IMG/VR virus record: IMGVR_UViG_3300037258_000590
Span: 62,001 to 126,000 of that record
Direction: 5' to 3' (one strand)
Length of the DNA: 64,000 bases
The notes under the pieces were generated by a model that searched no databases, was not told where the DNA came from, and saw nothing but the letters and a program-made list of their open reading frames with translations. This document shows, in pieces, positions 1,807-29,665 of this stretch. A program made the position numbers and the translations under genes. How positions within the stretch are numbered: position 1 is the stretch's first letter; each line of letters starts with the position of its first letter.

Positions 1807-2499
1807 TCAGCTGGCGCCGGGCCCGAACGGCTTCTGCCAGATCCCGTGCCGCTCGGAACTCCAGGCGTCCAGGATCGGGTACCACCCCATCGGCGGCCGG
1901 CATTCCAGGTTCGCGCACATGATCACCGCGCCCGGGTCAGCGGTGTTCCAGACCAGGGCCTCCAGCTTCGCCTGCAATGCTGTGTCGCGGAACGCGCGGT
2001 TGAACCAGAGCAGTTCGTGACCGCCGTAGCCGGGCATGCTGAGCGCGTCAGCGGTCACGACGTCGAGGCCCAGCGTGCGGCCGACCGCTGCGTACTCGTC
2101 AGATCTCTCGATGCCGTGCACGTCCAGGCCGAACACCTCACGGGCGATCAGCAGCTTGGTGGCGATGCCTGCGCCGATCTCCATGAGACACGGGGGCCTG
2201 TCGTCGGACTGCGGAACGTCAGGCGCGGCTTCAGCCAGCATCGCGATCCAGGTGAACAGCTGAAACGGCATCCACGGGGTGTACAGCTCACGCTCAGCCT
2301 CCTCCTGCGGTACCGCGCCGATCCACTTGCGTTCCATCTCCGCAGCCGTGCCGATCGCGCTGGCGATCTGCCGCCAGTTGGCTGGCATCAGCAATCGCCG
2401 CCCATCAGTCACCACCGCACTCAGGGCTGCCGCACCAGTCCGCGACCTGGCGCTGTCCTGGCCGCCGGGCCAGAGCGCCTGGATCGCGTTCAGGCTCAC
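1807..2499 (-). CDS. Class I SAM-dependent methyltransferase-like protein
   Basis: MEIGAGIA motif I, GIER acidic motif, VVTADAL. Confidence 0.6.
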   Translation of the reverse strand: MSLNAIQALWPGGQDSARSRTGAAALSAVVTDGRRLLMPANWRQIASAIGTAAEMERKWIGAVPQEEAERELYTPWMPFQLFTWIAMLAEAAPDVPQSDDRPPCLMEIGAGIATKLLIAREVFGLDVHGIERSDEYAAVGRTLGLDVVTADALSMPGYGGHELLWFNRAFRDTALQAKLEALVWNTADPGAVIMCANLECRPPMGWYPILDAWSSERHGIWQKPFGPGAS

Positions 2500-3649: not shown

Positions 3650-4735
3650 CTACAAGAGCCATTCAGGATGACTCATAGTCCAGCGCACGGTTCGTTCCAG
3701 GGACTCCGCGAACGGGACAGGCGGCTTCCAGCCGAGTGCGCGTATCTTGCCGGAATCCAGCGCGTAGTGCGGGTCGTGACCGGGCCTGGTGCTGTGGAAG
3801 TCCTCCAGCCGGTATTTCAGCGGCATCCCGGCCGCCTTGGCGATCATCTCCGCCAGGGTGAGGTTATCGATCCGGTCCGCGGACGCGATGTTGTACCGGT
3901 CCGGCCGGTCCGCCGGGGAGACCGCAGGGCGCCCGGCCTGGACGGCACGGTACGCCGTCGTCTGCTGCCCCAGGGTCAGGTGCGCCGGGAACGCGGCAGG
4001 CCTGGTCCGGCTCAGCAGGAACAGTACCGCGTCAGCCATGTTGCGGGCGTGCAGGTAATGCCGCGAGCCGATGTTTCCCGGGCTGCCGTGAATGGTCGTC
4101 TCATTACCCGCCAGCACGTCGCGCAGCACTTTCGGAAGGAACTTCTCCGGGTGCTGGCGCTCTCCTACCAGGTTCATCGTGTTCGATATGACGACTGGAA
4201 CACCGTATGTTCGCCAATATGAAATCGAAATTGCTTCCTGAGCGGCTTTACTAGCCGCGTACGGGTTACTGGGCAGGATGGGGGCCCACTCCCGGTGCGC
4301 ACGGCCTTTCGGCGCCGGGCCGTACACCTCATCAGTTGAGATCAGCACCACAGCTTTGGGTTTCAGCTGCCGTGCCAGCTCCAGGGTGTTCAGCGCGACC
4401 GCGAAGTTGTTCTCGCAGAAGGCTACAGGATCGGTGATTGACGTGTCGACGTGGGACTGGCTGGCCATCCCGATCAGGAAGTCCAGGCCGTCATGCCCGG
4501 CAATGATGTCCTGGGCCTGCGGGCTGAACGGCGCGGTCAGGTCATGGGTGAGCACGCCGACGCGTCCCCGCGCCCGTTCAGGATGCCCGCTGATCACCTG
4601 GGCGATCCGGTCAGTCGTGCCCCGGTGCCGGAATGAGTCGGTGCACACGATGTCCCAGTCGGTGACCGTAAGCGCGTGCTCCAGAAAATGGTGGCCAGCG
4701 AATCCGCCTGCCCCGGTCAATGCCAAGCGAGTCAT
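3650..4735 (-). CDS. rmlB: dTDP-glucose 4,6-dehydratase-like SDR (RmlB family)
   Basis: TGAGGFAG, ASQSHVDTSI, ISTDEVYG, PSNPYAASKA, RPGHDPHYALD. Confidence 0.85.
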   Translation of the reverse strand: MTRLALTGAGGFAGHHFLEHALTVTDWDIVCTDSFRHRGTTDRIAQVISGHPERARGRVGVLTHDLTAPFSPQAQDIIAGHDGLDFLIGMASQSHVDTSITDPVAFCENNFAVALNTLELARQLKPKAVVLISTDEVYGPAPKGRAHREWAPILPSNPYAASKAAQEAISISYWRTYGVPVVISNTMNLVGERQHPEKFLPKVLRDVLAGNETTIHGSPGNIGSRHYLHARNMADAVLFLLSRTRPAAFPAHLTLGQQTTAYRAVQAGRPAVSPADRPDRYNIASADRIDNLTLAEMIAKAAGMPLKYRLEDFHSTRPGHDPHYALDSGKIRALGWKPPVPFAESLERTVRWTMSHPEWLL

Positions 4736-12985: not shown

Positions 12986-12989
12986 TCTA

Positions 12990-13207: not shown

Positions 13208-13211
13208 CTGA

Positions 13212-13284
13212 TGGCTCGTAGTCCAGCGGACGAGGGCACCGGCCTCCTAAGCCGGGGGCGCGGGTTCGATTCCCGCCGGGCCAG
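13212..13284 (+). tRNA. tRNA-Arg(CCT)
   Basis: Loop CT CCT AA. Confidence 0.9.
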
Positions 13285-13322
13285 CAATTCCAGGGCGCTC
13301 ACGCTATGATCGTGGTTCCGTA

Positions 13323-13844: not shown

Positions 13845-13897
13845 TATCCGTGACGCCCGCTCCTCCTGCCAGCACAGCAAGCGAGAGGAGCATTTTC

Positions 13898-17196: not shown

Positions 17197-19394
17197 TCAG
17201 GCTCTAGGCCGGAACAGGGCCTCGTAAGCCGCCGCCCAGTCGCGCCAGTGATCTTCGATCAGGTACCGGCAGGCCATATCCCGGGCCGCCTCGCCCATAG
17301 TAACCCGCAAGTCATTATCGGCGGCGAGGAGGCTCATGTACTTAAGCCATTCATGGTCTTGCTTTACCAGGAACCCGTTGACGCCGTGCTCGATGACCGG
17401 GCGGTAGGCCTCGCAGTCGCTTGCGATCGCCGGGATCCCGCGAGCCCCGTACTCAATCGCTTTGATCGCGCTATTGTGGCTGTATATTCCGGCGGCTGAG
17501 AACGCTTCGCCGTCTACCTGGATGTCTACCGGGCAGACTATCCACGGCTCTACGACGGCGATCTCGTCTTCCCAGCGGATCGGCTGTATCATATTGCAGC
17601 CGCGAGGATCACGAACCCTGTCTGTGGCGTGGAGCAACACGGCGCGCTTCCGCTCGGAAAGGAATCCGACGCGTGCGGCGAACAGCCGGGTCTCATTCAG
17701 CCGCAGCCAGACTTGCCAGTAGACACGATCGGCATACGATGACCGCTGGGGCCCCCGGCAGGCCCGGACAACAGACGGGATGCCGATGCTCCACAGCAGC
17801 CGCTGCACGTCCCGGGCCAGATCTTCGCTCTTACTGGCCAGGCTGACTGCCGATTTAGTTACGTGCCCGTCTGCCTCGAACAGCCCGGCCAGGAACGCTG
17901 TACGCACCGGGTGCGGACTGCGGAAAATCACATCCGGAACCCGCAGCGTACGCTCCCGCCGCTGGCCCAGCTTCGAATGCGGCCTCCCTGCACCGACCGC
18001 GCACAGAAACCGGGACAGATGCGCGCTGGCTACGCTGACCGACCGGCGCCGCAGCACCTCACCGTCCCAGGTCGTGACTGCTTCCGCGGTAGCCCGGAAC
18101 CCGGCGGCTTCCAGATCAGTGATCAGCGCCTTGATCAGGTCGCCGTCCTGGCCGTCACAGGAGAACTTAATCGCGGTCTTACCCGAGAAATTGCCGTCCC
18201 CTGTGAACAGGCCGAGGATACGACCCCAGGTTTCGGTAATGGCGACGGACGGCCCCTCGGCCACATCCAGGAATGCCATCGGATGCACAGCGCCGGAACG
18301 CGTAACCCGGCCGTCAGCCGGCCAGGGTACGCGACGGACAGGCAGCTCCGGGCATTCCTCCTGGACTAGCCGGAGCTTATCGCCACACCGCAAGTCCCGG
18401 GCTTGACGCCACGTCCCTCCGCTATCCATCAGGCGGTGTTCAGGCGTGACTGCGACCTGGAGTCCGCGAGCTGTAGTGATGCGCATTCCGGCCCGTTGCA
18501 GCTGATGTTCCACGGCACGCACTTCGCGCCAGCCGTCCAGCCAGACGTTCATGCCTGCTTCGATCACGCCTGCTTCGATCACGCCTTGATCCGTCGAGAC
18601 TCGCATACTTGAATCTATGCATTTCGACTGATTGAAGGTGGTCGGCGCGAGCGGGCACAGGCCTATGTCGAAATCAATACTTACGTAGAACTCTTGCGGG
18701 TGCTGGTTGACCTGCATCCAGGGCACGTAGGACATCCGGTCTGCCGGAGCCTTGACGGTGGGCCGGTAGTCGGTGGCGTTGCACTGGAAGTCCCAGCCGG
18801 GAAAACGCCGCAGGAACCGGCGCACCGGATCGGCGACGATACCGATATCGACGCCGTGACTGGCCCCGCCCATCCAGCCGACCCGCGGGCGGGCACGCTC
18901 CAGCCTGGGCAGCGTGCACACCCAGCCTGGTATGCAGTTGGGCAGCACGGCAACCGCCGGGTTGTACTCGCGCATGACCTGGGCCAGCGGTTCGGTGCTC
19001 ACGGTCACCAGGTCGGCCGTCTGCGCGGCGTGCTCGATCGCGTCGCGGATGTCGGGGCGCCCGTACAGCGTATAAGCGTTCCAGTTGTCCGGCGTGACGT
19101 GGAATACATCGTCATCCAGCTCGAACACCAGCCGTGAGTGCGGGGTGCGGGCCCGCCGCCAGACAGGCAGGCCGTCATGCTTGTTCCAGCGCTGAGCCAC
19201 GATGACGTCGTAGCCCTGCAGGCTGGCCAGCGTGATGCGAGGCGGCGTGCCCGCCTGGTCTCCGGCATCGGCGAACGTGACCTCGAAGTCCGCATCGGAT
19301 TCGTCCTGGCACGCCAGCTCTTTGAGCGGCAGCTCCATGCGATACCAGGACAGGAGCACCCGGAGCCGCCGTCGTGTCCGGCGAAGATCTTCAC
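17197..19394 (-). CDS. GT-B (GT4-like) glycosyltransferase with intein; frameshift near 5' end
   Basis: FELDDD, VGWMGGASH, DIGLCPL..FNQSK|intein|SAIKAIEYGARGIPAIASD; N-terminus MKIFAGHDGGSGC lies in another frame owing to a TCCTG duplication at 19346-19355. Confidence 0.8.
17473..18621 (-). mobile_element. Intein with LAGLIDADG endonuclease in glycosyltransferase (383 aa)
   Basis: CIDSS start, TPEHRL block B, LGLFTGDG and FLAGLFEADG, ends SHN with Ser+1. Confidence 0.92.
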
Positions 19395-19651
19395 AGGTGC
19401 GGGTTCACCAGCTGCATCGGCTGATCCTTCCGGTAGCGGTAACCAGCAGAACCTTACAAGGCTTTTCGCGTACTATCCTCGCGTACAGGCTGGGATGTGG
19501 GCTTAGAGGCAGCCATCATCTAAGGAGTGAGGACACGCTGCCTCTTGTCCGAGGGCACCTGCGGTAAGAGCAGGAACGCTGGCGGGCGGGAGGGTAAACA
19601 GGGATCTTCTCTGGCGTAACAGCACACCAGGCTTCGCTTGCACCATACGCG

Positions 19652-19870
19652 TCACGCTGATCCCAGCCACCTGGCGTAAGCCCGGCCGTAGTCCCTGCCC
19701 ATGCAAGCCGAGCACAGCTTACGGGCCGGGCCGCCTGGCATGGCGAACATACGCCGGTTCCCGGCCGAGCTGCGGATGACAACCGGGGTGCCGGAGTCCT
19801 GATCCCGCCAGCGGTGGAACCACCGGCACCACAGGGCGCGCTTGAACGCCTGCCGCCACCTCGTGCTCAC
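19652..19870 (-). CDS. Hypothetical protein
   Basis: GTG start overlapping the upstream stop. Confidence 0.35.
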   Translation of the reverse strand: MSTRWRQAFKRALWCRWFHRWRDQDSGTPVVIRSSAGNRRMFAMPGGPARKLCSACMGRDYGRAYARWLGSA

Positions 19871-20082
19871 TGCGAGTGCCCCTGCATAAGCTGCTGCCCG
19901 CGCTCGGTGATCAGCAGGATCATGACCTGCGCACGGTCCAGGTTCGCGATCGCGAACTCCTGGCTGTCGCAGTACCCGCCGTCCGCGTGGCGGATCACGG
20001 CATCGCGCGAGATCAGCTGGACGGGCAGCCGGTGCCGTGCGCACGTGATGGCCCCGGCTGCCGCGTTCACCGTTCCTCGCAT
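19867..20082 (-). CDS. Hypothetical protein
   Basis: 71-aa ORF in minus-strand gene chain. Confidence 0.4.
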   Translation of the reverse strand: MRGTVNAAAGAITCARHRLPVQLISRDAVIRHADGGYCDSQEFAIANLDRAQVMILLITERGQQLMQGHSQ

Positions 20083-20618
20083 GTGCAGCCCGGCCCGTGG
20101 GCCATCACGCCGATGGCCGGCCGGCCACAGCGCGGAACCGCAAGCTCGTAGGCGTACCAGATATGCACGGTGACACCGGTTACCTGCCCGGCGGAAGCGC
20201 GGGTGACGACCTCGCTGCGGGTCACCGTGAACGGCCCCAGCGACGGCGGTTCCGGCCTCGGCAGTGCGGCGGGCACCAGCTCGTCATGCCAGGCGATCAC
20301 CGGGTCCCGGACGACGCTGGTAACGGCGCTCACCGCGGGTGCACGACCGTATGCTTCCGGCGGCCCAAGCCCGTGCTCTGCGCAGCGGTCACCAGCGCCA
20401 GCCCGGTGATGTCCCGTGCGGTCACGCCATCGCCAGCACTTCCCCGTCCGCCGCGCCCAGGACCTCGGCCAGCTCAGCACGGCTGCCGGCCGACCGCATC
20501 GGCGGCGGCCCTGCCCAGCGGGCGTCCCAGGACCAGGACCCGTCCGCCTGCTCCTGCAGCTGGATCAGCGCGGACCTGCGCGGCCGGATGTCTTGCGCGG
20601 TATCCGCAGCAAGGTCGC

Positions 20619-20975
20619 TCATCGCCGGCGCCGCCCGGGAACGACCAGGCCGGACGGCGTGTTCGCGGCCTGCAGCCCGGATCCGGACAGGCTGTCGCGC
20701 AGCTCGGCAAGCGTGTCGGCCCACTCGGCGGCGTCCCCCCGGGTCAGGGTGACGGTGATCGTCGCGGTGGTGGTCCGGATGGTGACGATGCCGACTTCAC
20801 CAGCCGGCACCGGCAGCTTGCCGGTCAGGAGCTGAGACGGGACCGCCGTGGCGAGCAGCCAGTTACCCGTGTCGTACAGCGGCGGCAGGCCGTCCGCTTC
20901 AGCGCAAGCTGACGGGTCCTGGATCGGGCGCCCCTGCGGGACCTGCTCCGGTGCTTGCGCGGGCGTATCGGGCAT
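20619..20975 (-). CDS. Hypothetical protein
   Basis: 118-aa ORF starting 10 nt after the GT2 stop. Confidence 0.5.
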   Translation of the reverse strand: MPDTPAQAPEQVPQGRPIQDPSACAEADGLPPLYDTGNWLLATAVPSQLLTGKLPVPAGEVGIVTIRTTTATITVTLTRGDAAEWADTLAELRDSLSGSGLQAANTPSGLVVPGRRRR

Positions 20976-20984
20976 GACGGCAGC

Positions 20985-21605
20985 TTACCGGTACAGCGAT
21001 GGCCACACGTCGACTGTCTCATCATCGACGCGGACGTGCGGTATCCCGGCGTTGATCATGGCGAGCACGAAGTCCCAGTCCTCGAACTGGCCGGCATGGT
21101 CCCAGCCGGGCAGCCCGTCCAGCACGCCGCGGCGGTGCATGACCATCGGAGTGCCGACGTTCCCGCACGCGAGCGGGCCATGGCCGATGACGGCCTCGCC
21201 GCCGGGCCCGTGACTGACCATCCGGGACACCGCGAAACCAGCCTCGGGGTTAGCGTCGAGCGCTGCGGCGAGCAGGTGGCAGTGCATCGGCCGCAGCGCG
21301 TCATCATCATCGCAGTACGTGATGTAGTCTCCGGCTGCGTATTCCAGGCCGTAATCGCGGGCCAGGTGCCCGTAGTGCTTGTCCGGGTCGTGCTCAGGAA
21401 GTTCCCGGTAGATCAGGTTCCGCCAGCCGTCCAGCCACGGCACCGACAGCTGCGCGGCCAGCTCGCTGTCCCGGCCGTCTGAGATCACCAGGTGCTCGGT
21501 CTGCGGATAGCCCTGAGCCTGCACGGACGGGATGGTCCTCTTGAGCAGCAATTCGTGTCTTTGCCAGGTCGGCGTGATCACGGTCACCAGCGGCAGGCTC
21601 ACCAT
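20985..21605 (-). CDS. GT2-family glycosyltransferase
   Basis: VTVITPTW, VISDG, YITYCDDDD, EDWDF. Confidence 0.85.
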   Translation of the reverse strand: MVSLPLVTVITPTWQRHELLLKRTIPSVQAQGYPQTEHLVISDGRDSELAAQLSVPWLDGWRNLIYRELPEHDPDKHYGHLARDYGLEYAAGDYITYCDDDDALRPMHCHLLAAALDANPEAGFAVSRMVSHGPGGEAVIGHGPLACGNVGTPMVMHRRGVLDGLPGWDHAGQFEDWDFVLAMINAGIPHVRVDDETVDVWPSLYR

Positions 21606-21921
21606 AGCTCCCGGGGCGGCAGGTCCGCCAGCACGCTGTCACGCGGGTCCTCGCAAGCCAGGTGGCAGGCAGCATGGTCATGCACGCCCTGGTAAGCGGG
21701 TCCGGGCCGGGCCACGGCGGGAACCCCCTCATTGCTGACCGCCTGATTCACGCGGTCGTAACCCCGCCAGCCCGCGCAGCCCCGGCGCCAGCCGCCTGTC
21801 CGCCCGGCGGCCAGCGAGGCAGGTGCCCGCTGGACGGCGCAGTGCGGGCAGAAGCCCTCGCAGACAGCGGCAGACCAGCGCCGGTAACGCCCGGCCCAGG
21901 CGCTGTCCGCGGCAGCAGTAC

Positions 21922-22212
21922 TCACGGCTGCCGCCAGGCCATCCAGTCCGGCACCGCGGCGCAGACCTGCTCCGGGCGCACGAGATCGTGATCAAGCCAG
22001 TTGCCGGCCTCGCCCGTGTCCTGGTTCCAGCCCCAGAAGTGCCTGCAGGCGATACAGTGCCCGGCAATGCGGCGCGGCGGCGCGGCCACGGCGTCCATCG
22101 GCGTCCGGTGGACCGGGCAGCGGCTTGCGCTGATCGCGGCGGTGAGGTGCTGGTACATGCCTGCGACCGTCTCCGGCGTAGCGTCCAGGATGACCGCTTC
22201 CGCGGGGGTCAT
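21922..22212 (-). CDS. Hypothetical protein (Cys motifs)
   Basis: CPVH...CIAC. Confidence 0.45.
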   Translation of the reverse strand: MTPAEAVILDATPETVAGMYQHLTAAISASRCPVHRTPMDAVAAPPRRIAGHCIACRHFWGWNQDTGEAGNWLDHDLVRPEQVCAAVPDWMAWRQP

Positions 22213-22548
22213 GCGTGCTCCCGCCGCCAGTGCCGGCGCCAGGCCTTCCAGGCGCGCGGAGTCCCGAGCCGCTTACGCCAGGCGCACCCGGTGACGGTGA
22301 CGCCGCCCGCCCGGCTGCTGCTGCGCTCGCTCCACGAGCACATGATTGTGCTGCCGCCTCTGTCCGGCTGCGGGCGCGCGGTCATCCTGGCCTCCTGTAC
22401 CAGAGGCCGCCTGCGAGAATCGCGATAATCACCCAGCTGAACGCGGTCGCCAGCCAGTCCGGGCCCGCATGCCATACCAGGGCATGAATGAGCCCCGCGC
22501 CAGCTAGCACCAGCAGCAGCAGTTCAGGCGCCGGCCTGAGAATGCGCA

Positions 22549-23283
22549 TCAGTATGGCCACCGGTCCGGGATGTTCAGCTTGCGGTTGAATTCGGCTAGC
22601 TCCCTGGGCATGAAAGCCGTGCCGCCGAGTTTAGCGATGTCGCTGTTGAGGCCGCCAGCGCCCGCCCGCCTGGAGTAGGCGTGCCAGGCAGCCAGGTCGG
22701 TGCCGGTCCGCGCGAAGCTGCGCGCGTAAGTCTCGTCGTGAGCGGCGCCAAGGGTGTAGTGATGATGCGGTATGAGCACGTCGCGCAGGAACTCATGCCC
22801 GCAGGCCGTGCACCAGGCATACCAGGCGACATCCACGTACATATGGCTGATTTCCGGCGGTCCCATGTAGCCCAGCGTTTCCACGACGTCGGTCCGCATG
22901 AAAATGTGGCAGCTCAGCGACCCGGGCTCGCGCGTCGGGTACAGGTCATTGGCGAACGCGAACGGCTGCCGCTCCAGCGCCCTGAGGACCGCGGTATCCC
23001 AGCCGTCTGATGAGCAGGTGTTGTCGTCACCCACCGTGCCGACCGCGCTGAAGCCGCCCAGCGTCATCAGCGCCAGGTGGTTGACCCAGGCGGTGACGTA
23101 GCGGAGCCCGTCCTGGACCACGTAACCAGGACCGGACGGGTAGTCCGCCAGCTGCGGGTCATCAGCGTCCAGGCCGGCCAGCAGGACGGTGCGGGCGGTG
23201 CAGGTACGGCGCATCGACTCCCAGAGCCGGGCCATGTTCTGCGGGCGCCCGCGGCTGGGCACGAACAGGCCGATGTCATCCAC
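22549..23283 (-). CDS. GT-A fold glycosyltransferase-like protein
   Basis: FVPSRGRP, GLDADD, TVGDD, HMYVD. Confidence 0.7.
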   Translation of the reverse strand: MDDIGLFVPSRGRPQNMARLWESMRRTCTARTVLLAGLDADDPQLADYPSGPGYVVQDGLRYVTAWVNHLALMTLGGFSAVGTVGDDNTCSSDGWDTAVLRALERQPFAFANDLYPTREPGSLSCHIFMRTDVVETLGYMGPPEISHMYVDVAWYAWCTACGHEFLRDVLIPHHHYTLGAAHDETYARSFARTGTDLAAWHAYSRRAGAGGLNSDIAKLGGTAFMPRELAEFNRKLNIPDRWPY

Positions 23284-23316
23284 GGAAAAGCCCCGCCGTC
23301 CATGCTTGCGGTGAGG

Positions 23317-23985
23317 TCACGGGCGTTCCCTGATTCCGGTAACAGGAATACCCACGATAAATCCGCGGGAGGGCGTCAGGGCGTTATCGTACCGGACCAG
23401 CTCTGTCGTGTAACCGAGCCTGTCAAGAAGGGCTGTGCACTGATCCCGGATGCCCATCTGCGCAGCGAAATCGTACACGTCAGTATGGTCTTCGATCAGC
23501 AGCTGAGGCCGGTACCGCCGTAGCGTTTCCGCACCGCCTTGCAGGACACCGAATTCAGCCCCCTCTACGTCTATCTTGATCCGGTCAAGCCGGGAGAAAC
23601 CCTCAGTAAGCTGGTCAAGCGTTGAATACCGCGCGTCCTTGCCTGCGTGATGTTCCGGATAGGGCGCAGCGTCTAGCTTAGCCCTGAACTCTGGCGTGTA
23701 GCCGCCCGGAGCAGACAAGGCACAGCTGGCAACGGTCAGCCGGGCCAGGTCGAGCCCGTTCAGCTCGCACAAGCTGACCAGGCGGGACGTATAAGCCGCA
23801 GACGGATCGACAGCATAGACAACAGCTCCCGCGATCAGGGCCGGGATCGTGTAACTGCCGATATGACAGCCGACGTCAACCACGACCTCACCGGGCTGAA
23901 CCTGCCAGTACGCAGCCCTGATCCCCGCTTCGTCTTCGAAATACCCGGTGACATCCGGATTGCCGGGGAGACGCAGGCTGTGCAT
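23317..23985 (-). CDS. FkbM-family methyltransferase
   Basis: VVDVGCHIGSYT, AVDP, IKIDVEGAE. Confidence 0.85.
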   Translation of the reverse strand: MHSLRLPGNPDVTGYFEDEAGIRAAYWQVQPGEVVVDVGCHIGSYTIPALIAGAVVYAVDPSAAYTSRLVSLCELNGLDLARLTVASCALSAPGGYTPEFRAKLDAAPYPEHHAGKDARYSTLDQLTEGFSRLDRIKIDVEGAEFGVLQGGAETLRRYRPQLLIEDHTDVYDFAAQMGIRDQCTALLDRLGYTTELVRYDNALTPSRGFIVGIPVTGIRERP

Positions 23986-24266
23986 CACAGCACCCCGGCG
24001 AGAATCAGGGCACCCAAGATGACAAGCGCAGCAGCCAGCCCGGTCACGGCGACGATGAGCCCGTTGACTACGCATCCGATCTGGCGGCCGATGTCATCCA
24101 CCAGGCAGCACCACCGTCCACGCCTGCGTCCAGCCGGCACGTTCAGCGCGTGCCGGGCAGCCTTCGCCATCCCAGCCTGCGCAAACCCACACGGTGCCGG
24201 TGTAGCCGTTGCCGATGTCGCCGGAGCGAGCTTTCATGGCCCCGTGCACGGGGCACTGCGGCGGGG

Positions 24267-24905
24267 TCATGCGCGCTCTCCGGGCACGCAGGCCAGGTAC
24301 GTGCGCGGCGGCGGCCCGTACGGGACTTCGGTCACCTCGTAGCCGAGGCCGGCCAGCAGGTCCAGGCACTTGCCCTTGCTGCCGGAGGCGGCGGTGTACG
24401 GGTAGACCTCGGTATGGTCCTCGATCAGCAGCCTTGGCCGGAACCGGGTCAGCGCGGCGCGCCCGCTGCGCAGCACGCCCAGTTCAGCGCCTTCCACGTC
24501 GATCTTGATCCAGTCCAGCCAGGTCAGGCCCGTGGTTACAGCGTCGAGCGTGATCCAGGGCACGTCCCGCGGCGGGATCAGGTAGCTGTACGGTGAGGCC
24601 TCCAGCGCCGCGCGCATATCCGCAGGATACCCGGCTGTATCGAAGACAGCGGCGTTGCGGACGGTGTACCAGGTCAGCTGGTTGAGCCGTGCGACCCGTT
24701 CCAGCTTGGCCGTCGCGCCGGCATCGGGATCCACGGCGAGCACCCGGGCGCCCGCCATCAGGGCCGGGATCGTGTAGCTGCCGACCGCGGCGCCGAGATC
24801 GATCACGGTGTCGCCTGCCTGCGGATGCCAGTACGCGTCCCGGACGTCCTGCTCGTCGGCGTACGCGGCGGCCAGCCCCGGCTCGTCCGGCAGCAGGATG
24901 CCCAT
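24267..24905 (-). CDS. FkbM-family methyltransferase (paralog)
   Basis: VIDLGAAVGSYT, IKIDVEGAE. Confidence 0.85.
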   Translation of the reverse strand: MGILLPDEPGLAAAYADEQDVRDAYWHPQAGDTVIDLGAAVGSYTIPALMAGARVLAVDPDAGATAKLERVARLNQLTWYTVRNAAVFDTAGYPADMRAALEASPYSYLIPPRDVPWITLDAVTTGLTWLDWIKIDVEGAELGVLRSGRAALTRFRPRLLIEDHTEVYPYTAASGSKGKCLDLLAGLGYEVTEVPYGPPPRTYLACVPGERA

Positions 24906-25549
24906 CAGCAGCTCCCTTCGGTGTCCAGCACGGTCAGCCAAGGATAAGCGGGCAGCGGCTGGATAGCGGCGAGGAGCAGCGGACGGCGGCGCGTCCGGTG
25001 GGAGTCGGTGCTGGAGAACTGGTACCTGTACATGACTTCGGGGATCCAGGCTTCCTCGCGGACGAGCCCGGTAGCGCGGATAGCGGCGGCCCACCGGTAA
25101 TCCTCGCTGTCGCCGCCGTCGAAGCGCGCCATGACGGCGATGTCACGGCGGACCGGGTTCAGGTGAGAGATGTCCCGGACCAGCCGTTCTGGCCAGTCGT
25201 GCCAGCCGTCGTACCGGATGGAATGCTCGGCGCGCTGGGCGGGCAGGCCGTCCACGGTGCAGTCGACCATGAAGCCCACGTAGTCCGGGCGGGCGCCCAG
25301 CTCGGACAGCACCCGGAACGTGAACTGCGGGGAAACCCAGTCGTCATCGTCGGCGAAGCTGACGTACCCGGCAGAGCTGGCTTCGGTCAGCGCCTGCCGT
25401 TTCACCGCGACGGGCGCGGTCAGGTTGTCACGGTACAGCAGGGCCCCGAACCCGGGGCGGGCCTGGGCATCCAGGCTGGCCAGCAGCCCGCACAGCTGTT
25501 CGTGCCGGTGCGGGATGGTGGCGATGAGCAGCTGCCACAGCAAGCTCAT
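24905..25549 (-). CDS. GT2-like glycosyltransferase
   Basis: LIATIPHR, YVSFADDDD, SEDY. Confidence 0.8.
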   Translation of the reverse strand: MSLLWQLLIATIPHRHEQLCGLLASLDAQARPGFGALLYRDNLTAPVAVKRQALTEASSAGYVSFADDDDWVSPQFTFRVLSELGARPDYVGFMVDCTVDGLPAQRAEHSIRYDGWHDWPERLVRDISHLNPVRRDIAVMARFDGGDSEDYRWAAAIRATGLVREEAWIPEVMYRYQFSSTDSHRTRRRPLLLAAIQPLPAYPWLTVLDTEGSC

Positions 25550-26196
25550 GTGCCGAACCTGCGCAGCCACGGGTAGGCGGGGAGTCCCGGCAGCGTCCCG
25601 GATACCGGCTGGCGGGCGGTCTGGAACGTATCCGCGGTGCTCTCCCGGTAGTAGTACATCGCGTCCGGGATCCAGGCTTCGGTGCGGCACCGGCCGGTCG
25701 CGCGGATCCCGGCCGCCCATGCGACCTCGGCCCCGTAGCCGCCGTCGAACGGGACGAGCAGCGCGATCTCCCGGCGTACGGGGTTCTTCTCGCTGATGTC
25801 GCGTTCCAGGCACTGGTCGCTGGCACCCCAGCCGGGGTACCGCAGCGAGTGCTCTACCCGGCGCTGCAGCGCTCCGTCGCGAGTCCACCGGACCGGGTAG
25901 CCCACGTAGTCCGGGCGGTCCCGCAGCGCGGCGGTGACCCGGGCCACGAAATCCGGGGCCACCATGTCATCGTCGTCCACGCAGGACACGTACTCCGCGC
26001 CGGAGTTCTCGATCAGCACCTGGGTCTTGTACCCGTAACTGTGCTCCAGGTTGTCCCGGTACAGCAGCACGCCGACCTCGCCGCGAGCCGCCGGCAGCTG
26101 CCGGCCCAGCTCGGCCAGCAGCTCGCACAGCAGCCCGTGCCGGTGCGGGATCGAGGTGATCAGGATGTCGTAGGAAGGATACGGGCCGCCGGTCAT
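25546..26196 (-). CDS. GT2-like glycosyltransferase (paralog)
   Basis: LITSIPHR, YVSCVDDDD; 4-nt overlap with the next gene. Confidence 0.8.
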   Translation of the reverse strand: MTGGPYPSYDILITSIPHRHGLLCELLAELGRQLPAARGEVGVLLYRDNLEHSYGYKTQVLIENSGAEYVSCVDDDDMVAPDFVARVTAALRDRPDYVGYPVRWTRDGALQRRVEHSLRYPGWGASDQCLERDISEKNPVRREIALLVPFDGGYGAEVAWAAGIRATGRCRTEAWIPDAMYYYRESTADTFQTARQPVSGTLPGLPAYPWLRRFGT

Positions 26197-26525
26197 GCCA
26201 CCGCGGCCCTCGCCTGTTCCAGTTCTTCGATGTTGCTGCCGTTGACGGGAAGTGCCCAGATCCGGTCGTCTGCGTACCGGGGATGTTCCGGCGGCAATGT
26301 CTTCAGCCGGAAATGGCCCAGCCGCCGGATGTCCTCCCATTTCTCGATCCACCGGCCGCCTCGCGACCGGGCCAGCACCCGGACACGCCCAGGCAGGTTC
26401 CCGCCGAGCTGAGGGATGACATACGCCCTGGCCCCCGCGGCCACTGCACTGACCGAGACAACGTAATTGCAGGCGATCACCTGACGGTCCGCGCTCCGGC
26501 CGGCTGGTTCCTGGTTCGCGATCAT
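26193..26525 (-). CDS. Hypothetical protein
   Basis: 4-nt overlaps on both sides. Confidence 0.5.
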   Translation of the reverse strand: MIANQEPAGRSADRQVIACNYVVSVSAVAAGARAYVIPQLGGNLPGRVRVLARSRGGRWIEKWEDIRRLGHFRLKTLPPEHPRYADDRIWALPVNGSNIEELEQARAAVA

Positions 26526-27070
26526 GTCAGGATCGGCACGTCCAGCCTGATCGTGTCCCGCTCGTACTCCGTGGCGGCCCGCGGCCCGCGGGTGAGCACC
26601 AGGACAATGCAGTCGGTGACGGCCTTCCAGGCGTGCGGGATGCCAGCCGGCTCGCGGATGAAATCGCAGGCCTGGGCGTCCCGGGTGTGCACGCCGTCAT
26701 CTTCAAGCCAGGCGACCTGCAGCTGCCCGGATACGACGTAGGTCCACTGCGTGGTCAGCTTGTGGACGTGATTGCCGCGCACGGCGCCGGCCCGGGTGAT
26801 GATCTCGGTGACCGCATCAGCGTGCCCGAGCAGGTCCTGGATGCGCCCTCGCTCGTCGGTGAACTGGCCAAGCTCCAGCTGCGCGGTACCGCCAGGTGCG
26901 GTAGCAGCCTCGGCGAGGATGGCCCGCCTGAGCGATTCCAGCTGGGCGGTCGCCAGCTGGCCGTCACCGAGGATGTCGCCGTAGGTGCCTGCGATGACGT
27001 CCCAGACAGCCATGCCAGCCGCCCGTCCGGCCTTTTCCAGGGCGTCGTCGTCGGGATAGCGGTCAGCCAT
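26522..27070 (-). CDS. Cupin, WxcM/FdtA-like NDP-sugar isomerase
   Basis: DERG, RGNHVH...QWTYVVSG, PAGIPHAW. Confidence 0.7.
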   Translation of the reverse strand: MADRYPDDDALEKAGRAAGMAVWDVIAGTYGDILGDGQLATAQLESLRRAILAEAATAPGGTAQLELGQFTDERGRIQDLLGHADAVTEIITRAGAVRGNHVHKLTTQWTYVVSGQLQVAWLEDDGVHTRDAQACDFIREPAGIPHAWKAVTDCIVLVLTRGPRAATEYERDTIRLDVPILT

Positions 27071-27356
27071 CGTGCGGGTCCTCTCGTCCGGCGCGCCAGT
27101 GCCAGGTGCCGCCCGGATAGTCCCGGCCGCCGCACAGGTCCTGGCGCAGTTCTCCTGGGTTCAGTGACCGGCCCTCGTGTCCCGGGCCGGCGGCAAAGGC
27201 GTCCCGTCGTAAGGCCAGTACCAGGCGATGGTGCACAGGCCGTTGATGATGCCTGCCGGCAGGCCGGGCGGCATCCAGGCCTGCGGACCCGGGGTCAGGG
27301 TTACCCGCCCGCCGCGCGGCTGCGCGATCGGGTCCAGGGCGATCCGGAGCGGGATA

Positions 27357-28487
27357 TCAGCCATGCCACAGCCTGGCATGCGGGAGCGGGACGATGAACT
27401 GGCCTTCGTACCCGGCGGCGCGCAGCTTGGGCGCGATGTCGCCGGCGATGTGCCAGGCGAGCAGCAGCGCGTACGGCGGCTGGGCCTGCATCAGCTCGGC
27501 CTCGTCCACGATGGGTACGGCGGTGCCGGGCAGCATGGTGCCGATCTTGTCTGAGCCGGCCACCTCGGCGATCTTGCTCAGGCAGGAGGCGATACCCGCC
27601 CAGTGCACGAGCGGGGTGGCCCGGGTGGACGCGCTGATCCCCCAGACCGGGCCGGCCCCGGCGGCCTTCTCCATCAGCTGGAGCAGGTACCTGCGGGCGG
27701 TGTCGGCACGGGGCTGCAGGTGCCCGCTGTCCAGCCAGGCGGCCCAGGTGCGGAACGAGCCGCCGTGAACCGGGACGTGCTCGACCCGTTCCGGGACCAG
27801 GCCGTGCATGGCCAGCGCGGCGAGCAGCGTGCCGGGGGTGTAGAACCGCAGGTGCTCGTGGTACACGGTGTCGACCTGCAGGCCGTTCACGACCGAGGCC
27901 CAGTCGTGATTCTCGGTGATGAACGTGCCGCCCTCATCGAGCAGGCTGGTGACCCCGGCGAGGAAATCATGCTGGTCGCCGGCGTGAGCGAGTACATTGC
28001 ACGCGACGATCACCCGGGCCTTGCCGAGCCAGCGGGCGATGTCCCGGGCCAGGGCGGCGGACCAGAAGGACTGCTGGACCGGGATGGCCTTGCGGCGCGC
28101 CCTGGCCGCCTGGCCGGTCGGTTCCACGGCCAGCAGCCGGGCCCCGGGCGCGTGGTGCCGGACCGCTTCCAGCAGCGTCCCGTCATTAGCGCCGATGTCG
28201 ACCACCAGGTCTCCCGGCTTCAGCCCGGCGGCGATGTCCGCGGCCAGCGCGCCGAAATGGCGGCGCATCGCGGCGGAGTTCCCGGTGGTGTACGGGTGAT
28301 TTTCCGGGAACACCTGCTCCCGGTCCGGGGCGTAGGTCAGCTGGGCCAGGCCGCACCGGGCGCATTCGGCGACGGCCAGCGGGTAGCGGTGCCCGTCGTC
28401 CCGCTCGGCCAGCGGCTGCTCTCCCATGTCCAGCACCACGTCCAGCCGCGGGTCTCCGCAGGTTCCGCAGCTCGTGACCTCACCCAC
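27357..28487 (-). CDS. NDP-hexose C-methyltransferase-like protein
   Basis: N-terminal CGTC...CARC Zn site, VVDIGANDG, YHEHLRFY, HGGS, C-terminal LLLAW..FIVPLP. Confidence 0.8.
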   Translation of the reverse strand: MGEVTSCGTCGDPRLDVVLDMGEQPLAERDDGHRYPLAVAECARCGLAQLTYAPDREQVFPENHPYTTGNSAAMRRHFGALAADIAAGLKPGDLVVDIGANDGTLLEAVRHHAPGARLLAVEPTGQAARARRKAIPVQQSFWSAALARDIARWLGKARVIVACNVLAHAGDQHDFLAGVTSLLDEGGTFITENHDWASVVNGLQVDTVYHEHLRFYTPGTLLAALAMHGLVPERVEHVPVHGGSFRTWAAWLDSGHLQPRADTARRYLLQLMEKAAGAGPVWGISASTRATPLVHWAGIASCLSKIAEVAGSDKIGTMLPGTAVPIVDEAELMQAQPPYALLLAWHIAGDIAPKLRAAGYEGQFIVPLPHARLWHG

Positions 28488-28716
28488 GGGCGGCCTCCGC
28501 GGGCGGCTTGACCCAGGGGAACCGGGCGGTGACGTCGCTGCCGGGTTCTTCGGTGATGGCGTCCCAGCCGCCCGGCGCGAACACGGCCACCGGGTCAGCA
28601 GAGCCGGCCGGGTACAGGTGCAGGTAACCGCCCGCCTGCAGGAACCTGTTCGCGAGCACGACGGCCGTGCCGCCAGCCTGGTTCCGGGTGAGCCAGGCCC
28701 GCAGGCGGTCAGCCAT
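28480..28716 (-). CDS. Hypothetical protein
   Basis: Overlaps both neighbours. Confidence 0.4.
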   Translation of the reverse strand: MADRLRAWLTRNQAGGTAVVLANRFLQAGGYLHLYPAGSADPVAVFAPGGWDAITEEPGSDVTARFPWVKPPAEAARG

Positions 28717-29665
28717 GGGCCTGGTACCAGGAGACCGTCTGGCTGAGCCCGTACTCGAACGGGGTGACGGTGAGCGCGGCGCCCGCCAGGTCGTAGATCT
28801 TGGCCAGGTCAGGCAGGCGCCGGGGCGGTGAGCCCTTGGGCAGGCTGCCGGGCAGCAGCTTGATCTCGCGGCCGTAGCACTCCGCGACCGCGTGCGCGAC
28901 CCCGGCGATAGTCATCTCGTTCGCGGTACCGACGTTGTAGATGCCGGTGATCGCGCGGTCCAGCAGCAGGGCCAGCTGGCTGGTGCAGTCGCCGACCCAG
29001 CAGAACGAGCGGGTCTCCTGCCCCGTGCCCTGAACCGGGAACGTGATGACGCCGCTGGCGGCCTCGGCGGTCAGGTCGTTCATCCGGATGCAGAATTCCG
29101 GGATGACGTGCTCGCGGCCCATGTCGGGACCGTAGATGTTGTGCGGCCGGGCGATCACCGCCCGGTCCAGGACCCCGGCGCGTTCCCAGGCCAGGGCGGC
29201 CAGCTCGCAGGCGATCTTGCCGCCGCCGTAGCTGTACCGCATGTTGAGCGGGTCCGGGACGGTCAGCGGGACGGTCTCCGGGGTCGGCACCGTGGCGGCG
29301 ACCTGGTAGGCCTCGCTGGAGGACACCAGGAGAAGGTCGCCGCACCCGGTCGCCTGGCAGGCGTCCAGCACGGAGAGCATCCCGCGCAGGGCCACGTCGA
29401 GCACGGCCCGCGGCTCGGCGTAGAACGTCTGGGTGCCCTGGAGGTAGGCCAGGTGGGCCACGGCGTCGCAGCCGTGCATGGCGTCACGCACGGCATCAGC
29501 GTCGCGGATGTCGCCGGGAATGACCTCGATCCCGGAGCCGTCCAGGCGGGAGCGCTTGCCCCGGCTCATGTCATCGAAGACCCGCACCTCATGACCCGCG
29601 GCGGCCAGCTTGCGGGACAGGGCGCTGCCGATGAAGCCGGCGCCGCCGGTCACCATTATCTTCAT
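28709..29665 (-). CDS. NAD-dependent sugar epimerase/dehydratase
   Basis: TGGAGFIG, VSSSEAY, YGGGK, RPHNIYGP. Confidence 0.88.
   Translation of the reverse strand: MKIMVTGGAGFIGSALSRKLAAAGHEVRVFDDMSRGKRSRLDGSGIEVIPGDIRDADAVRDAMHGCDAVAHLAYLQGTQTFYAEPRAVLDVALRGMLSVLDACQATGCGDLLLVSSSEAYQVAATVPTPETVPLTVPDPLNMRYSYGGGKIACELAALAWERAGVLDRAVIARPHNIYGPDMGREHVIPEFCIRMNDLTAEAASGVITFPVQGTGQETRSFCWVGDCTSQLALLLDRAITGIYNVGTANEMTIAGVAHAVAECYGREIKLLPGSLPKGSPPRRLPDLAKIYDLAGAALTVTPFEYGLSQTVSWYQAHG

What the first reader, a model, noticed from the sequence alone, without database searches (positions are those of the whole stretch)
17197..29665. Phage-encoded methylated/branched-sugar glycan pathway within the morphogenesis region
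Seen: one GT-B, four GT-A/GT2, two FkbM methyltransferases, a C-methyltransferase, a cupin isomerase and an epimerase, plus RmlB-like and MTase genes at 1.8-4.7 kb. All are co-oriented with and downstream of the capsid genes. Known: RmlB, cupin and C-methyltransferase make branched deoxysugars, and some actinophages glycosylate virions. Inference: the phage synthesises its own unusual NDP-sugars to decorate virions, or modifies the host envelope or DNA.
Basis: partly seen in the sequence, partly recalled or inferred. Interest (0 to 1): 0.7.

Follow-up and report, generated by a model that had tools for sequence, protein, structure and literature searches.

The report
Phage branched-sugar glycosylation cluster with intein
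A 210-kb soil phage, probably of actinobacteria, carries among its head and tail genes a full kit for making a methyl-branched sugar and building a methylated glycan, most likely to coat its own particle, and one of its glycosyltransferase genes is split by a self-splicing intein.

Summary
Window 17197-29665, all on the minus strand, holds:
- one extended SDR ("epimerase");
- one TcaB9-type sugar C-methyltransferase;
- one cupin with the fold of keto-sugar epimerases and isomerases;
- four GT-A glycosyltransferases;
- two FkbM methyltransferases;
- one GT-B glycosyltransferase.

An RmlB-like 4,6-dehydratase (3650-4735) and a class I methyltransferase-like gene (1807-2499) lie further down the same strand. 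The cluster sits downstream of terminase, portal, protease and capsid genes. It is upstream of an adaptor gene and a probable tape-measure gene.

- The GT-B gene is interrupted by a 383-aa LAGLIDADG intein at its donor-binding motif. Close relatives carry the uninterrupted gene.
- The SDR, C-methyltransferase and cupin trio plus glycosyltransferases is a module. It recurs on many large metagenomic contigs that carry phage genes. It lay near head or tail genes in five of the seven contexts examined and beside replication genes in one.
- Two of the GT-A genes are homologous to the N-domain of gp108 of mycobacteriophage Che8, whose virions are reported to be glycosylated.

Sugar synthesis is well supported. 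The target is inferred. Virion proteins are the most likely target. DNA is disfavoured because the genome has no ThyA-type hydroxylase or hydroxymethylase. I rate it a new variant of a known kind.

The parts
28709..29665 (-). Extended SDR (318 aa) with an NAD-type GxxGxxG, a Ser/Tyr/Lys triad (SSSEAY, YGGGK) and Asp after beta-2. It is either the 4-ketoreductase or a C4-oxidising epimerase or dehydratase.
   Evidence: Pfam Epimerase, E 7e-39. Its best solved relatives are TunA, a UDP-GlcNAc 4-epimerase and UXS1, at E about 1e-25. It is conserved next to the C-methyltransferase in all 10 viral loci.
28480..28716 (-). Small ORF (78 aa) of unknown function, overlapping both neighbours.
   Evidence: Codon-position GC. 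Independent gene call.
27357..28487 (-). NDP-sugar C-methyltransferase of the TcaB9/KijD1/MtmC type (376 aa). It has an N-terminal four-Cys zinc domain, a SAM domain and a C-terminal domain.
   Evidence: Pfam Methyltransf_13/12/14. TcaB9, E 3e-44. The equivalents of TcaB9 His181, Tyr222, Glu224 and His225 are kept. Tyr76 is replaced by His.
27161..27364 (-). Small ORF (67 aa) of unknown function.
   Evidence: Independent gene call.
26522..27070 (-). Cupin (182 aa). It has a poorly modelled, partly helical N-terminal extension of about 70 aa, followed by a barrel with the motifs F-x-DERG-x-IQDLL, VRGNHVH and PHAW. Probable keto-sugar epimerase or 3,4-ketoisomerase.
   Evidence: Cupin_2. The motifs are conserved in nine phage homologs. 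The model's best fold matches are the CapF cupin, FdtA, StrM, QdtA and FdtD. A natural fusion with the C-methyltransferase exists, P0112.
26193..26525 (-). Small ORF (110 aa) of unknown function.
25546..26196 (-). GT-A glycosyltransferase (216 aa) with a DDDD motif.
   Evidence: phrog_14775, E 1.5e-26. phiAsp2 Pas33, E 2e-33, and Che8 gp108 N-domain, E 3e-17.
24905..25549 (-). GT-A glycosyltransferase (214 aa) with a DDDD motif. It is 51% identical to its upstream neighbour.
   Evidence: phrog_14775, E 1e-31. Che8 gp108, E 2e-13. Start and stop.
24267..24905 (-). FkbM-family methyltransferase 2 (212 aa).
   Evidence: PF05050. TIGR01444, E 7e-20.
23317..23985 (-). FkbM-family methyltransferase 1 (222 aa). 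It is 45% identical to FkbM2 and its third-position GC is lower than its neighbours'.
   Evidence: PF05050, E 2e-13. TIGR01444. GC3 of 0.65, computed on the longer 23317-24075 call. Paralogy.
22549..23283 (-). GT-A-fold glycosyltransferase (244 aa).
   Evidence: phrog_14945, E 2e-27. Model with pLDDT 85.5. Its fold matches are WrtF, TarP, SpsA and other GT-A enzymes. Homologs occur in Streptomyces and Arthrobacter phages.
22382..22549 (-). Small ORF (55 aa) with two hydrophobic helices. It is the only predicted membrane protein in the cluster.
20985..21605 (-). GT2-family glycosyltransferase (205 aa) with a DDDD motif.
   Evidence: PF00535, E 2e-14. It is 60-78% identical to orthologs in L002-L004.
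18622..19359 (-). GT-B glycosyltransferase, N-extein (residues 1-246).
   Evidence: Alignment with the uninterrupted orthologs in L003 and L004.
17473..18621 (-). Class 1 intein (383 aa, Cys247 to Asn629) with a LAGLIDADG homing endonuclease. It is inserted in the conserved donor-binding motif of the GT-B.
   Evidence: LAGLIDADG_3, E 4e-16, plus Hom_end. It is precisely absent from the orthologs. It carries Cys1, a TPEH block B, two LAGLIDADG motifs and a terminal HN followed by Ser.
17197..17472 (-). GT-B glycosyltransferase, C-extein (residues 630-720) and stop codon.
   Evidence: Glycos_transf_1, residues 631-694. Alignment.
3650..4735 (-). RmlB-like NDP-hexose 4,6-dehydratase (361 aa) with the STDEVYG and YAASK motifs.
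   Evidence: TIGR01181, E 3e-54, below the curated cut-off. Sequence. A 70% identical ortholog sits at a similar distance in relative G001.
1807..2499 (-). Probable class I SAM-dependent methyltransferase (230 aa). Its link to the pathway is uncertain.
   Evidence: No Pfam, PHROG or NCBIfam match. It has a motif I-like LMEIGAGIA. Atlas feature score of 0.97 to viral methyltransferase clusters.

Best explanation
The cluster is a phage-encoded pathway that makes a C-methyl-branched deoxy-sugar nucleotide. It then assembles an O-methylated oligosaccharide, most likely on the phage's own virion proteins during late infection.

**Proposed steps**
1. The host supplies the NDP-hexose. dTDP-glucose is inferred, and the phage has no nucleotidyltransferase of its own.
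2. The RmlB-like dehydratase (3650-4735), or the host's RmlB, makes the 4-keto-6-deoxy sugar. This step is inferred from motifs.
3. The TcaB9-type enzyme transfers a methyl group from SAM to the carbon next to the keto group. This rests on family membership and four of five conserved catalytic residues.
4. The cupin epimerises or isomerises the keto-sugar. This rests on fold and motifs. A natural fusion of C-methyltransferase and cupin ties the two steps together.
5. The SDR reduces the keto group. This step is inferred, and the SDR could instead be the C4-oxidising enzyme.
6. Four soluble GT-A enzymes and one GT-B enzyme add sugars, and the two FkbM enzymes O-methylate them. This rests on family membership.

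The GT-B can work only after its 383-aa intein has spliced itself out of the precursor.

**Confidence by part**
- Sugar synthesis plus glycan assembly: about 0.9.
- Virion proteins as the acceptor: about 0.45.
For: - **Families and motifs.** Searches give the family matches. DxD-type motifs are present in all four GT-A enzymes.
- **Folds.** The cupin model matches keto-sugar epimerases and isomerases best. The 244-aa enzyme has a GT-A fold.
- **Module conservation.** The SDR, C-methyltransferase and cupin sit next to glycosyltransferases in 10 of 10 viral loci and in six further metagenomic contexts. In two of those six no cupin was flagged by Pfam. The fusion protein P0112 joins C-methyltransferase and cupin.
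- **Position.** The cluster lies between the head genes and the adaptor and probable tape-measure genes. The module lies near capsid, Mu-F head or tail-tube genes in four other contigs, from three groups by gene context.
- **Link to known virion glycosylation.** Che8 gp108 is annotated as a glycosyltransferase, and Che8's capsid carries glycans according to PMC11256854 and PMC12619734. Its N-domain is homologous to the tandem GT-A pair here, at E 3e-17 and 2e-13. The other homologs found in phage records are all in actinophages.
- **Against the other routes.** None of the enzymes has a transmembrane segment. The 210-kb genome has no ThyA-like gene and no further glycosyltransferases outside the cluster.
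Against: - There are no data on any glycan, virion protein or transcript.
- In one lineage the module sits beside replication genes. In Arthrobacter phage Racecar the homologous glycosyltransferases sit among nucleic-acid genes. Position is therefore not a reliable guide to the acceptor.
- The closest solved relatives of the SDR oxidise C4 rather than only reduce it.
- Some relatives carry a UDP-glucose dehydrogenase fragment instead of RmlB. The nucleotide and the starting sugar are therefore uncertain.
- The cupin also resembles metal-binding cupins such as oxalate decarboxylase.
- One 55-aa two-helix membrane ORF lies inside the cluster.
- The Che8 paper itself (PMC10527164) could not be read.
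Confidence: 0.5

Rival explanations
1. The glycan is put on the host envelope, not on the virion. Possible acceptors are wall teichoic-acid-like polymers, arabinogalactan, lipoglycans or lipid-linked precursors. The purpose would be to mask receptors, block superinfection, or keep progeny from sticking to debris. Prophage TarP and the Gtr systems act in this way.
For: - The fold matches of the 244-aa GT-A include the wall-teichoic-acid enzymes TarP, TarS and RmlT.
- The nearest NCBIfam names for the GT2 enzyme are undecaprenol-linked glycan transferases, at E about 1e-8 and far below the cut-offs.
- A small two-helix membrane ORF sits in the cluster.
- JGI names the GT-B homologs 'involved in cell wall biosynthesis'. 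This is an automatic name.
Against: - The cluster contains no transmembrane glycosyltransferase and no recognisable flippase, polymerase or transporter. The initiating-transferase and flippase families were not searched genome-wide.
- The genome has terminal repeats, which points to a free rather than an integrated genome. No search for an integrase was made.
- The cluster sits in the late structural strand.
- The fold matches are generic for GT-A enzymes.
Confidence: 0.2
2. The sugars hypermodify the phage DNA, as with glucosyl-hydroxymethylcytosine or arabinosyl-hydroxycytosine, to escape restriction.
For: - Phage glycosyltransferases are classically DNA-modifying.
- The phage invests in DNA chemistry, with a PurZ-like gene and ThyX.
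- In one relative the module lies beside replication genes.
Against: - The complete genome has no thymidylate-synthase-type hydroxymethylase or hydroxylase (PF00303). This enzyme starts the hmC- and hoC-based glycosylated-pyrimidine routes described in preprint 10.1101/2025.06.16.659550.
- Five transferases and two or three methyltransferases are far more than known DNA glycosylation systems need (own knowledge).
- The GT-A pair is homologous to a glycosyltransferase of Che8, a phage whose virions are glycosylated.
Confidence: 0.07
3. The enzymes glycosylate something else. Candidates are a non-structural phage or host protein, or a small molecule such as a host antibiotic or signalling compound. 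In this reading their place among the structural genes is an accident of mosaic insertion next to the tRNA island.
For: - The cluster is flanked by mobile or accessory material: TnpB, a 39-tRNA array, Ro60 and three inteins.
- The FkbM pair is missing from the closest relatives, and FkbM1 has atypical codon-position GC.
Against: - The same order, from capsid through the trio and glycosyltransferases to the GT-B, is kept in relatives whose capsid proteins are 87-93% identical. It is also kept in two further contigs of this lineage.
- This suggests a stable, selected arrangement.
Confidence: 0.08

Closest known systems
Virion glycosylation of actinobacteriophages (mycobacteriophage Che8 and relatives; Freeman et al. 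2023, as cited in PMC11256854, PMC12619734 and PMC13313380)
   Same: - Phage-encoded soluble glycosyltransferases in actinophages.
- The GT-A pair here is homologous to the Che8 gp108 N-domain and to phiAsp2 Pas33, which is part of a GT, methyltransferase, GT cassette placed after the tail genes.
   Different: - Che8 has three glycosyltransferase genes at the genome end and no sugar-nucleotide synthesis genes in the region inspected.
- Here there are five transferases, two FkbM methyltransferases and a dedicated branched-sugar pathway, all inside the structural strand.
- gp109 and gp110 have no homolog here.
- No glycan has been shown for this phage.
Bacterial branched-chain deoxysugar pathways (TcaB9 in D-tetronitrose, KijD1 in kijanimicin, MtmC/TylC3 in mycarose)
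   Same: - A C-methyltransferase with the same three-domain build, with four of five catalytic residues conserved.
- It is accompanied by a 4,6-dehydratase, a cupin and an SDR. By my own knowledge this mirrors the TylC3, TylK, TylC2 steps of mycarose synthesis.
   Different: - The similarity to TcaB9 is distant (E 3e-44; identity was not computed).
- No 2,3-dehydratase or aminotransferase turned up among the cluster's genes, so the product would be neither a 2-deoxy nor an amino sugar.
- The cupin matches neither the RmlC nor the FdtA Pfam family.
- The setting is a phage genome, not an antibiotic gene cluster.
CapF of Staphylococcus aureus (SDR plus cupin, C3-epimerase and C4-reductase of a UDP-4-hexulose)
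   Same: - It is the best fold match of the phage cupin.
- By my own knowledge it divides the labour the same way: the cupin epimerises next to the keto group and the SDR reduces it.
   Different: - In CapF the two domains are fused. Here they are separate genes with a C-methyltransferase between them.
- Sequence similarity is not detectable.
Giant-virus glycosylation machinery (chlorovirus PBCV-1 A064R and A061L; mimivirus sugar clusters; PMC9614988)
   Same: The virus encodes its own glycosyltransferases and sugar O-methyltransferases, and in some cases sugar-nucleotide pathways, to decorate capsid or fibril proteins.
   Different: - Those are viruses of eukaryotes, and their enzymes are not shown to be homologous to these.
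- I know of no report of a C-branched sugar in those viruses (own knowledge, not searched).
Phage inteins with LAGLIDADG endonucleases (terminase and other mycobacteriophage inteins; PMC3706429)
   Same: - A canonical class 1 intein in a highly conserved active-site motif.
- It is sporadically present among close relatives.
- The same phage has probable inteins in its terminase and portal genes.
   Different: - The host protein is a glycosyltransferase. A related intein sits in an FkbM methyltransferase.
- No paper in the searched library describes an intein in either enzyme class.

Membership tests
TcaB9/TylC3-type NDP-sugar C-methyltransferases | N-terminal four-cysteine zinc domain (PF08421) | tested here: met
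   Methyltransf_13, E 1e-9, residues 7-60. CxxC...CxxC is visible in the sequence.
TcaB9/TylC3-type NDP-sugar C-methyltransferases | Central SAM-binding domain and C-terminal PF08484 domain | tested here: met
   Methyltransf_12/23 and Methyltransf_14, E 1e-19. TcaB9, KijD1 and MtmC are the only solved relatives.
TcaB9/TylC3-type NDP-sugar C-methyltransferases | Active-site residues probed in TcaB9: Tyr76, His181, Tyr222, Glu224, His225. This list is from my own knowledge. The numbering is SEQRES minus 2. | tested here: inconclusive
   His181, Tyr222, Glu224 and His225 align with identical residues. Tyr76 aligns with His.
TcaB9/TylC3-type NDP-sugar C-methyltransferases | SAM-dependent methylation of a carbon next to the keto group of an NDP-keto-sugar | not testable with these tools
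   Needs an enzyme assay.
dTDP-glucose 4,6-dehydratase (RmlB) | Score above the curated family cut-off | tested here: not met
   TIGR01181 scores 184 bits against a cut-off of 365. The protein is a divergent relative, not an equivalog.
dTDP-glucose 4,6-dehydratase (RmlB) | Catalytic Thr-Asp-Glu and Tyr-x3-Lys motifs (own knowledge) | tested here: met
   STDEVYG and YAASK are present.
Sugar 3,4-ketoisomerases and epimerases of the cupin fold (FdtA/QdtA, CapF cupin, StrM) | Cupin barrel superposable on these enzymes | tested here: met
   They are the top Foldseek matches, at E 1e-8 to 1e-7, with TM 0.59 by target for FdtA. Barrel pLDDT is 85-95.
Sugar 3,4-ketoisomerases and epimerases of the cupin fold (FdtA/QdtA, CapF cupin, StrM) | Sequence membership in the FdtA or RmlC Pfam family | tested here: not met
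   Only Cupin_2 and Cupin_1 match. The best sequence relative in the PDB is the oxalate decarboxylase cupin. WxcM-like scores only E 0.6. A His-x-His pair (RGNHVH) like the one in FdtA is present (the comparison is from my own knowledge).
Class 1 intein with LAGLIDADG homing endonuclease | Precise insertion relative to uninterrupted orthologs | tested here: met
   Residues 247-629 are absent from the L002, L003 and L004 orthologs, and the flanks are 60-76% identical.
Class 1 intein with LAGLIDADG homing endonuclease | Cys1, block B TxxH, terminal His-Asn, and a nucleophile at +1 | tested here: met
   Cys247, TPEH, and ...YSHN followed by Ser630.
Class 1 intein with LAGLIDADG homing endonuclease | Two LAGLIDADG motifs | tested here: met
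   LGLFTGDG and LAGLFEADG. PF14528, E 4e-16.
Class 1 intein with LAGLIDADG homing endonuclease | Protein splicing and homing activity | not testable with these tools
   Needs an expression assay.
Che8-type actinophage virion glycosylation system | Glycosyltransferases homologous to Che8 gp108-110 | tested here: inconclusive
   The gp108 N-domain matches two GT-A genes, at E 3e-17 and 2e-13. gp109 and gp110 have no match.
Che8-type actinophage virion glycosylation system | Glycans covalently attached to capsid and tail-tube subunits | not testable with these tools
   Needs mass spectrometry of virions.
DNA glycosylation systems (glucosyl-hmC, arabinosyl-hoC, glycosylated hmU) | Phage thymidylate-synthase homolog that makes the hydroxylated or hydroxymethylated pyrimidine | tested here: not met
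   No PF00303 match in the complete genome. Only a ThyX is present.
FkbM methyltransferases | PF05050/TIGR01444 domain above the cut-off | tested here: met
   51 and 43 bits against 22.7. About 72 bits against 37.7.

The most novel reading that the evidence does not exclude
A widespread group of large soil phages of actinobacteria coats its virions with a glycan containing a C-methyl-branched, O-methylated deoxyhexose, made entirely by phage enzymes. To my knowledge this would be the first branched-chain sugar reported in a virus. The glycosylation genes are also a target of their own family of homing inteins, found in GT-B and FkbM genes. This would mean these genes are conserved and exchanged between co-infecting phages, much as terminase or polymerase genes are.
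Probability: 0.35. Interest if true: 0.7.

Novelty: new variant of a known kind. Interest (0 to 1): 0.6.

Why it matters
- **Known background.** Virion glycosylation in phages was recognised only recently. It is reported to shield the particles from antibodies (cited in PMC11256854 and PMC10955285).
- **Wider chemistry.** This cluster suggests the chemistry goes well beyond simple hexoses. The phage appears to carry a whole deoxysugar branching pathway, otherwise known mainly from antibiotic gene clusters (own knowledge).
- **Abundance.** The C-methyltransferase had 1314 homologs at E <= 1e-20 among those scored, many on contigs of 50-255 kb. The closest relatives found are in soil metagenomes. 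The module may therefore be a common, unstudied trait of soil phages.
- **New enzymes.** It offers compact, soluble enzymes for making branched sugars.
- **New intein host.** It adds a new class of host protein for inteins. The site of insertion marks the GT-B donor-binding motif as the conserved core of the system.

Tried and rejected
- **Near and distant DNA searches against isolated phages.** These gave no match, or only a 155-bp hit to Actinoplanes phage phiAsp2. The phage has no cultured close relative.
- **FkbM2 against phage records.** No match.
- **Whole-genome searches.** A nucleotidyltransferase (PF00483), ThyA (PF00303), MazG and tail-tube family PF18906 were all absent.
- **Promoter and terminator scan of 17-36.9 kb.** It found no more sites than in shuffled sequence. 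Operon limits remain unknown.
- **Search for an intein-free allele of the same strain.** I laid the contigs of four soil runs on the gene. Only the intein-bearing form appeared, and both junctions were covered in a second sample.
- **Complex prediction of C-methyltransferase with cupin.** The tool returned 'no answer', which is no evidence either way.
- **Exact look-ups of the L005 and L007 enzymes.** They were not on record.
- **The primary Che8 paper.** It is not held in the library. What I say about it rests on papers that cite it and on my own knowledge.
- **Rejected idea.** I considered that the trio's SDR is a UDP-glucuronate decarboxylase. The arginine needed in UXS (its role is own knowledge) aligns with histidine here. 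The idea is not fully excluded, because some relatives carry a UDP-glucose dehydrogenase fragment.

Full report
**Source.** The window is bases 62001-126000 of a 210,383-bp IMG/VR virus record. The record has direct terminal repeats and is rated 100% complete. GC content is about 68%. The same sequence occurs in four soil metagenomes. It has no near relative among 50,697 phage records. Its capsid protein is about 30% identical to those of small Streptomyces phages. Its glycosyltransferases find homologs in phage records only in phages of Actinoplanes, Mycobacterium, Gordonia, Streptomyces and Arthrobacter. One protein carrying the same intein is recorded from a Streptomyces assembly. The host is therefore probably a soil actinobacterium. 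This is an inference.

**Gene calling.** At this GC content the longest-ORF list is misleading, so I used codon-position GC. I checked the result against independent gene calls for the same phage on another assembly. The two agree.

**Checking the observation.**
- SDR 28709-29665 (Epimerase, E 7e-39).
- C-methyltransferase 27357-28487 (three diagnostic Pfam domains).
- Cupin 26522-27070.
- GT-A 25546-26196 and GT-A 24905-25549. Both match phrog_14775, both give weak PF00535 matches, and they are 51% identical to each other.
- FkbM 24267-24905 and 23317-23985.
- GT-A 22549-23283 (phrog_14945). A model with pLDDT 85.5 matches GT-A enzymes.
- GT2 20985-21605.
- GT-B 17197-19359.

All four GT-A proteins carry an acidic DxD-type motif. 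About ten small ORFs of unknown function lie between these genes. Only one of them, a 55-aa ORF, is hydrophobic.

The RmlB-like gene at 3650-4735 has the dehydratase signature STDEVYG and YAASK, but scores below the curated cut-off. The gene at 1807-2499 looks like a methyltransferase only by a motif and by language-model features.

These are the only glycosyltransferase and FkbM genes in the genome.

**Position.** On the same strand, upstream, lie the large terminase (45012-47819), portal (39545-42136), protease (38057-39076), major capsid protein (36663-37928) and a connector (36001-36600). Next come a TnpB-type transposase (33481-35133) and small ORFs.

Downstream, beyond the window's start, lie a head-tail adaptor, a 2031-aa protein with a transglycosylase domain (probably the tape measure), tail-fibre-like proteins and an endolysin.

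The main cluster is separated from the RmlB-like gene by a plus-strand island of 39 tRNA genes (5540-13285) and a Ro60/TROVE gene.

The GT-B ORF encodes 720 aa, but the orthologs in three related viral loci have about 340 aa. Residues 2-247 and 629-716 of the window's protein map to directly adjoining DNA in those loci.

The alignment places the insertion after ...NQSK246. It begins with Cys247 and ends ...YSHN629, followed by Ser630. It contains a TPEH block B and two LAGLIDADG motifs.

The insertion point lies in the most conserved stretch of the GT-B. I read this stretch as the donor-binding motif of GT4-type enzymes (own knowledge).

About 35 other GT-B proteins of 680-930 aa in metagenomes carry a related intein at 36-73% identity. 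A further one is in a Streptomyces assembly. One related intein interrupts an FkbM methyltransferase. More distant relatives sit in ribonucleotide reductases.

At least 671 intein-free GT-B homologs exist at E <= 1e-30, so the intein is sporadic. I found no paper describing an intein in a glycosyltransferase.

**The sugar chemistry.** The only solved relatives of the C-methyltransferase are TcaB9, KijD1 and MtmC, which are the sugar 3-C-methyltransferases. Four of the five active-site residues studied in TcaB9 are identical.

The cupin has no informative sequence relative. Its conserved motifs are F-x-DERG-x-IQDLL, VRGNHVH and PHAW. Its model matches best the cupin of CapF, FdtA, StrM, QdtA and FdtD, all of which act on NDP-keto-sugars.

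In one metagenomic protein the C-methyltransferase and this cupin are fused. This links the two steps.

The SDR has an NAD-type fold and a Ser/Tyr/Lys triad with a neighbouring Glu. Its nearest solved relatives are enzymes that oxidise C4 transiently. Its role as the final ketoreductase is therefore an inference.

The phage has no nucleotidyltransferase, so the host must supply the sugar nucleotide. The RmlB-like gene is shared with the closest large relative but is missing from two more distant near-complete phages that carry the trio. Other relatives carry a UDP-glucose dehydrogenase fragment instead. The identity of the starting nucleotide sugar is therefore open.

**The module elsewhere.** A scan of viral contigs with the C-methyltransferase gave 10 loci. 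In all of them SDR, C-methyltransferase and cupin are adjacent and are followed by glycosyltransferases.

Two of these loci share capsid proteins of 87-93% identity and the same gene order from capsid to GT-B. The FkbM pair is missing from those close relatives and occurs in only one other locus.

The protein search found 1314 homologs at E <= 1e-20 among those scored, many on contigs of 50-255 kb. The contexts read were:
- two further contigs of this lineage, with protease or portal, capsid, the module and GT-B in order;
- one contig with a Mu-F head gene upstream;
- one contig with a tail-tube gene downstream;
- one contig beside replication genes;
- one set of short contigs with no informative neighbours.

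**The acceptor.** This is the weak point. Four observations favour virion proteins:
- the placement described above;
- the homology of the GT-A pair to the N-domain of Che8 gp108 (E 3e-17), from a phage whose capsid carries glycans according to PMC11256854 and PMC12619734;
- the similar GT, methyltransferase, GT cassette after the tail genes of phiAsp2;
- the practice in the field of reading such genes as signs of virion glycosylation (PMC13313380).

Against DNA, the complete genome has no ThyA-type enzyme. That enzyme is the starting point of the hmC- and hoC-based routes described in preprint 10.1101/2025.06.16.659550.

Against the envelope, no enzyme has a transmembrane segment, and the cluster has no recognisable flippase or transporter. 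Peripheral enzymes acting on lipid-linked acceptors cannot be excluded, and the fold matches include teichoic-acid transferases.

**Verdict.** The acceptor remains an inference, with the virion most likely.

The system is a new variant of virus-encoded glycosylation. It has a branched-sugar pathway, FkbM methylation and an intein-split transferase. Its C-methyltransferase and FkbM genes have at best distant homologs in isolated phages. No paper in the searched library mentions a 3-C-methyltransferase together with phage.

Noticed in passing
window 45012-47819 (-): The large terminase (935 aa) carries a LAGLIDADG_3/Hom_end domain at residues 311-379. The sequence ...PTHN followed by Cys456 looks like an intein C-terminal junction just downstream of the P-loop. 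This is a probable intein. Its N-terminal boundary was not determined and may be non-canonical.
   Followed up: partly
window 40196-41221 (-), within portal gene 39545-42136: The portal protein (863 aa) has a 342-aa insertion, Cys306 to Asn647 followed by Thr, that is absent from the ortholog in L003. It begins CVTEDTQILT and ends ...YFTGN. This is a probable intein with no recognisable endonuclease domain and no penultimate His. It brings the count to three probable inteins in one window.
   Followed up: partly
window 48899-50185 (-): An adenylosuccinate-synthetase homolog matches the phage PurZ family (phrog_1211, E 2e-71). The phage DNA may contain 2-aminoadenine in place of adenine. No MazG was found in the genome. 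One HD-domain protein lies at genome 187488-188912.
   Followed up: partly
window 5540-13285 (+): An array of 39 tRNA genes covers nearly all amino acids. It is followed by a Ro60/TROVE-like RNA-binding protein at 13850-15577. A relative also has RtcB next to Ro60.
   Followed up: no
window 33481-35133 (-): A TnpB-type gene (OrfB_IS605 / Cas12f-like TNB domain; 550 aa) lies between the connector genes and the sugar cluster. It is not seen at this place in relatives L003 and L004.
   Followed up: no
protein P0137 (metagenomic contig): An intein 46% identical to the GT-B intein interrupts an FkbM methyltransferase just before its K-x-DVEGAE motif. One intein family therefore occupies two different enzymes of phage glycosylation clusters.
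   Followed up: partly
window 24097-24270 (-) and 21922-22212 (-): Two small ORFs inside the cluster (58 and 96 aa) have Cys/His patterns that suggest zinc ribbons (CPVH...C...C and CPVH...C-x2-C). Their function is unknown.
   Followed up: no
window 53605-54597 (-): A ThyX (flavin-dependent thymidylate synthase) gene with an N-terminal extension of about 110 aa.
   Followed up: no
relatives' contigs: In two relatives, a family 5 glycoside hydrolase gene (Pfam Cellulase) lies on the opposite strand about 1-2 kb downstream of the GT-B gene. One relative also has an animal-haem-peroxidase-like gene between the capsid gene and the sugar cluster.
   Followed up: no
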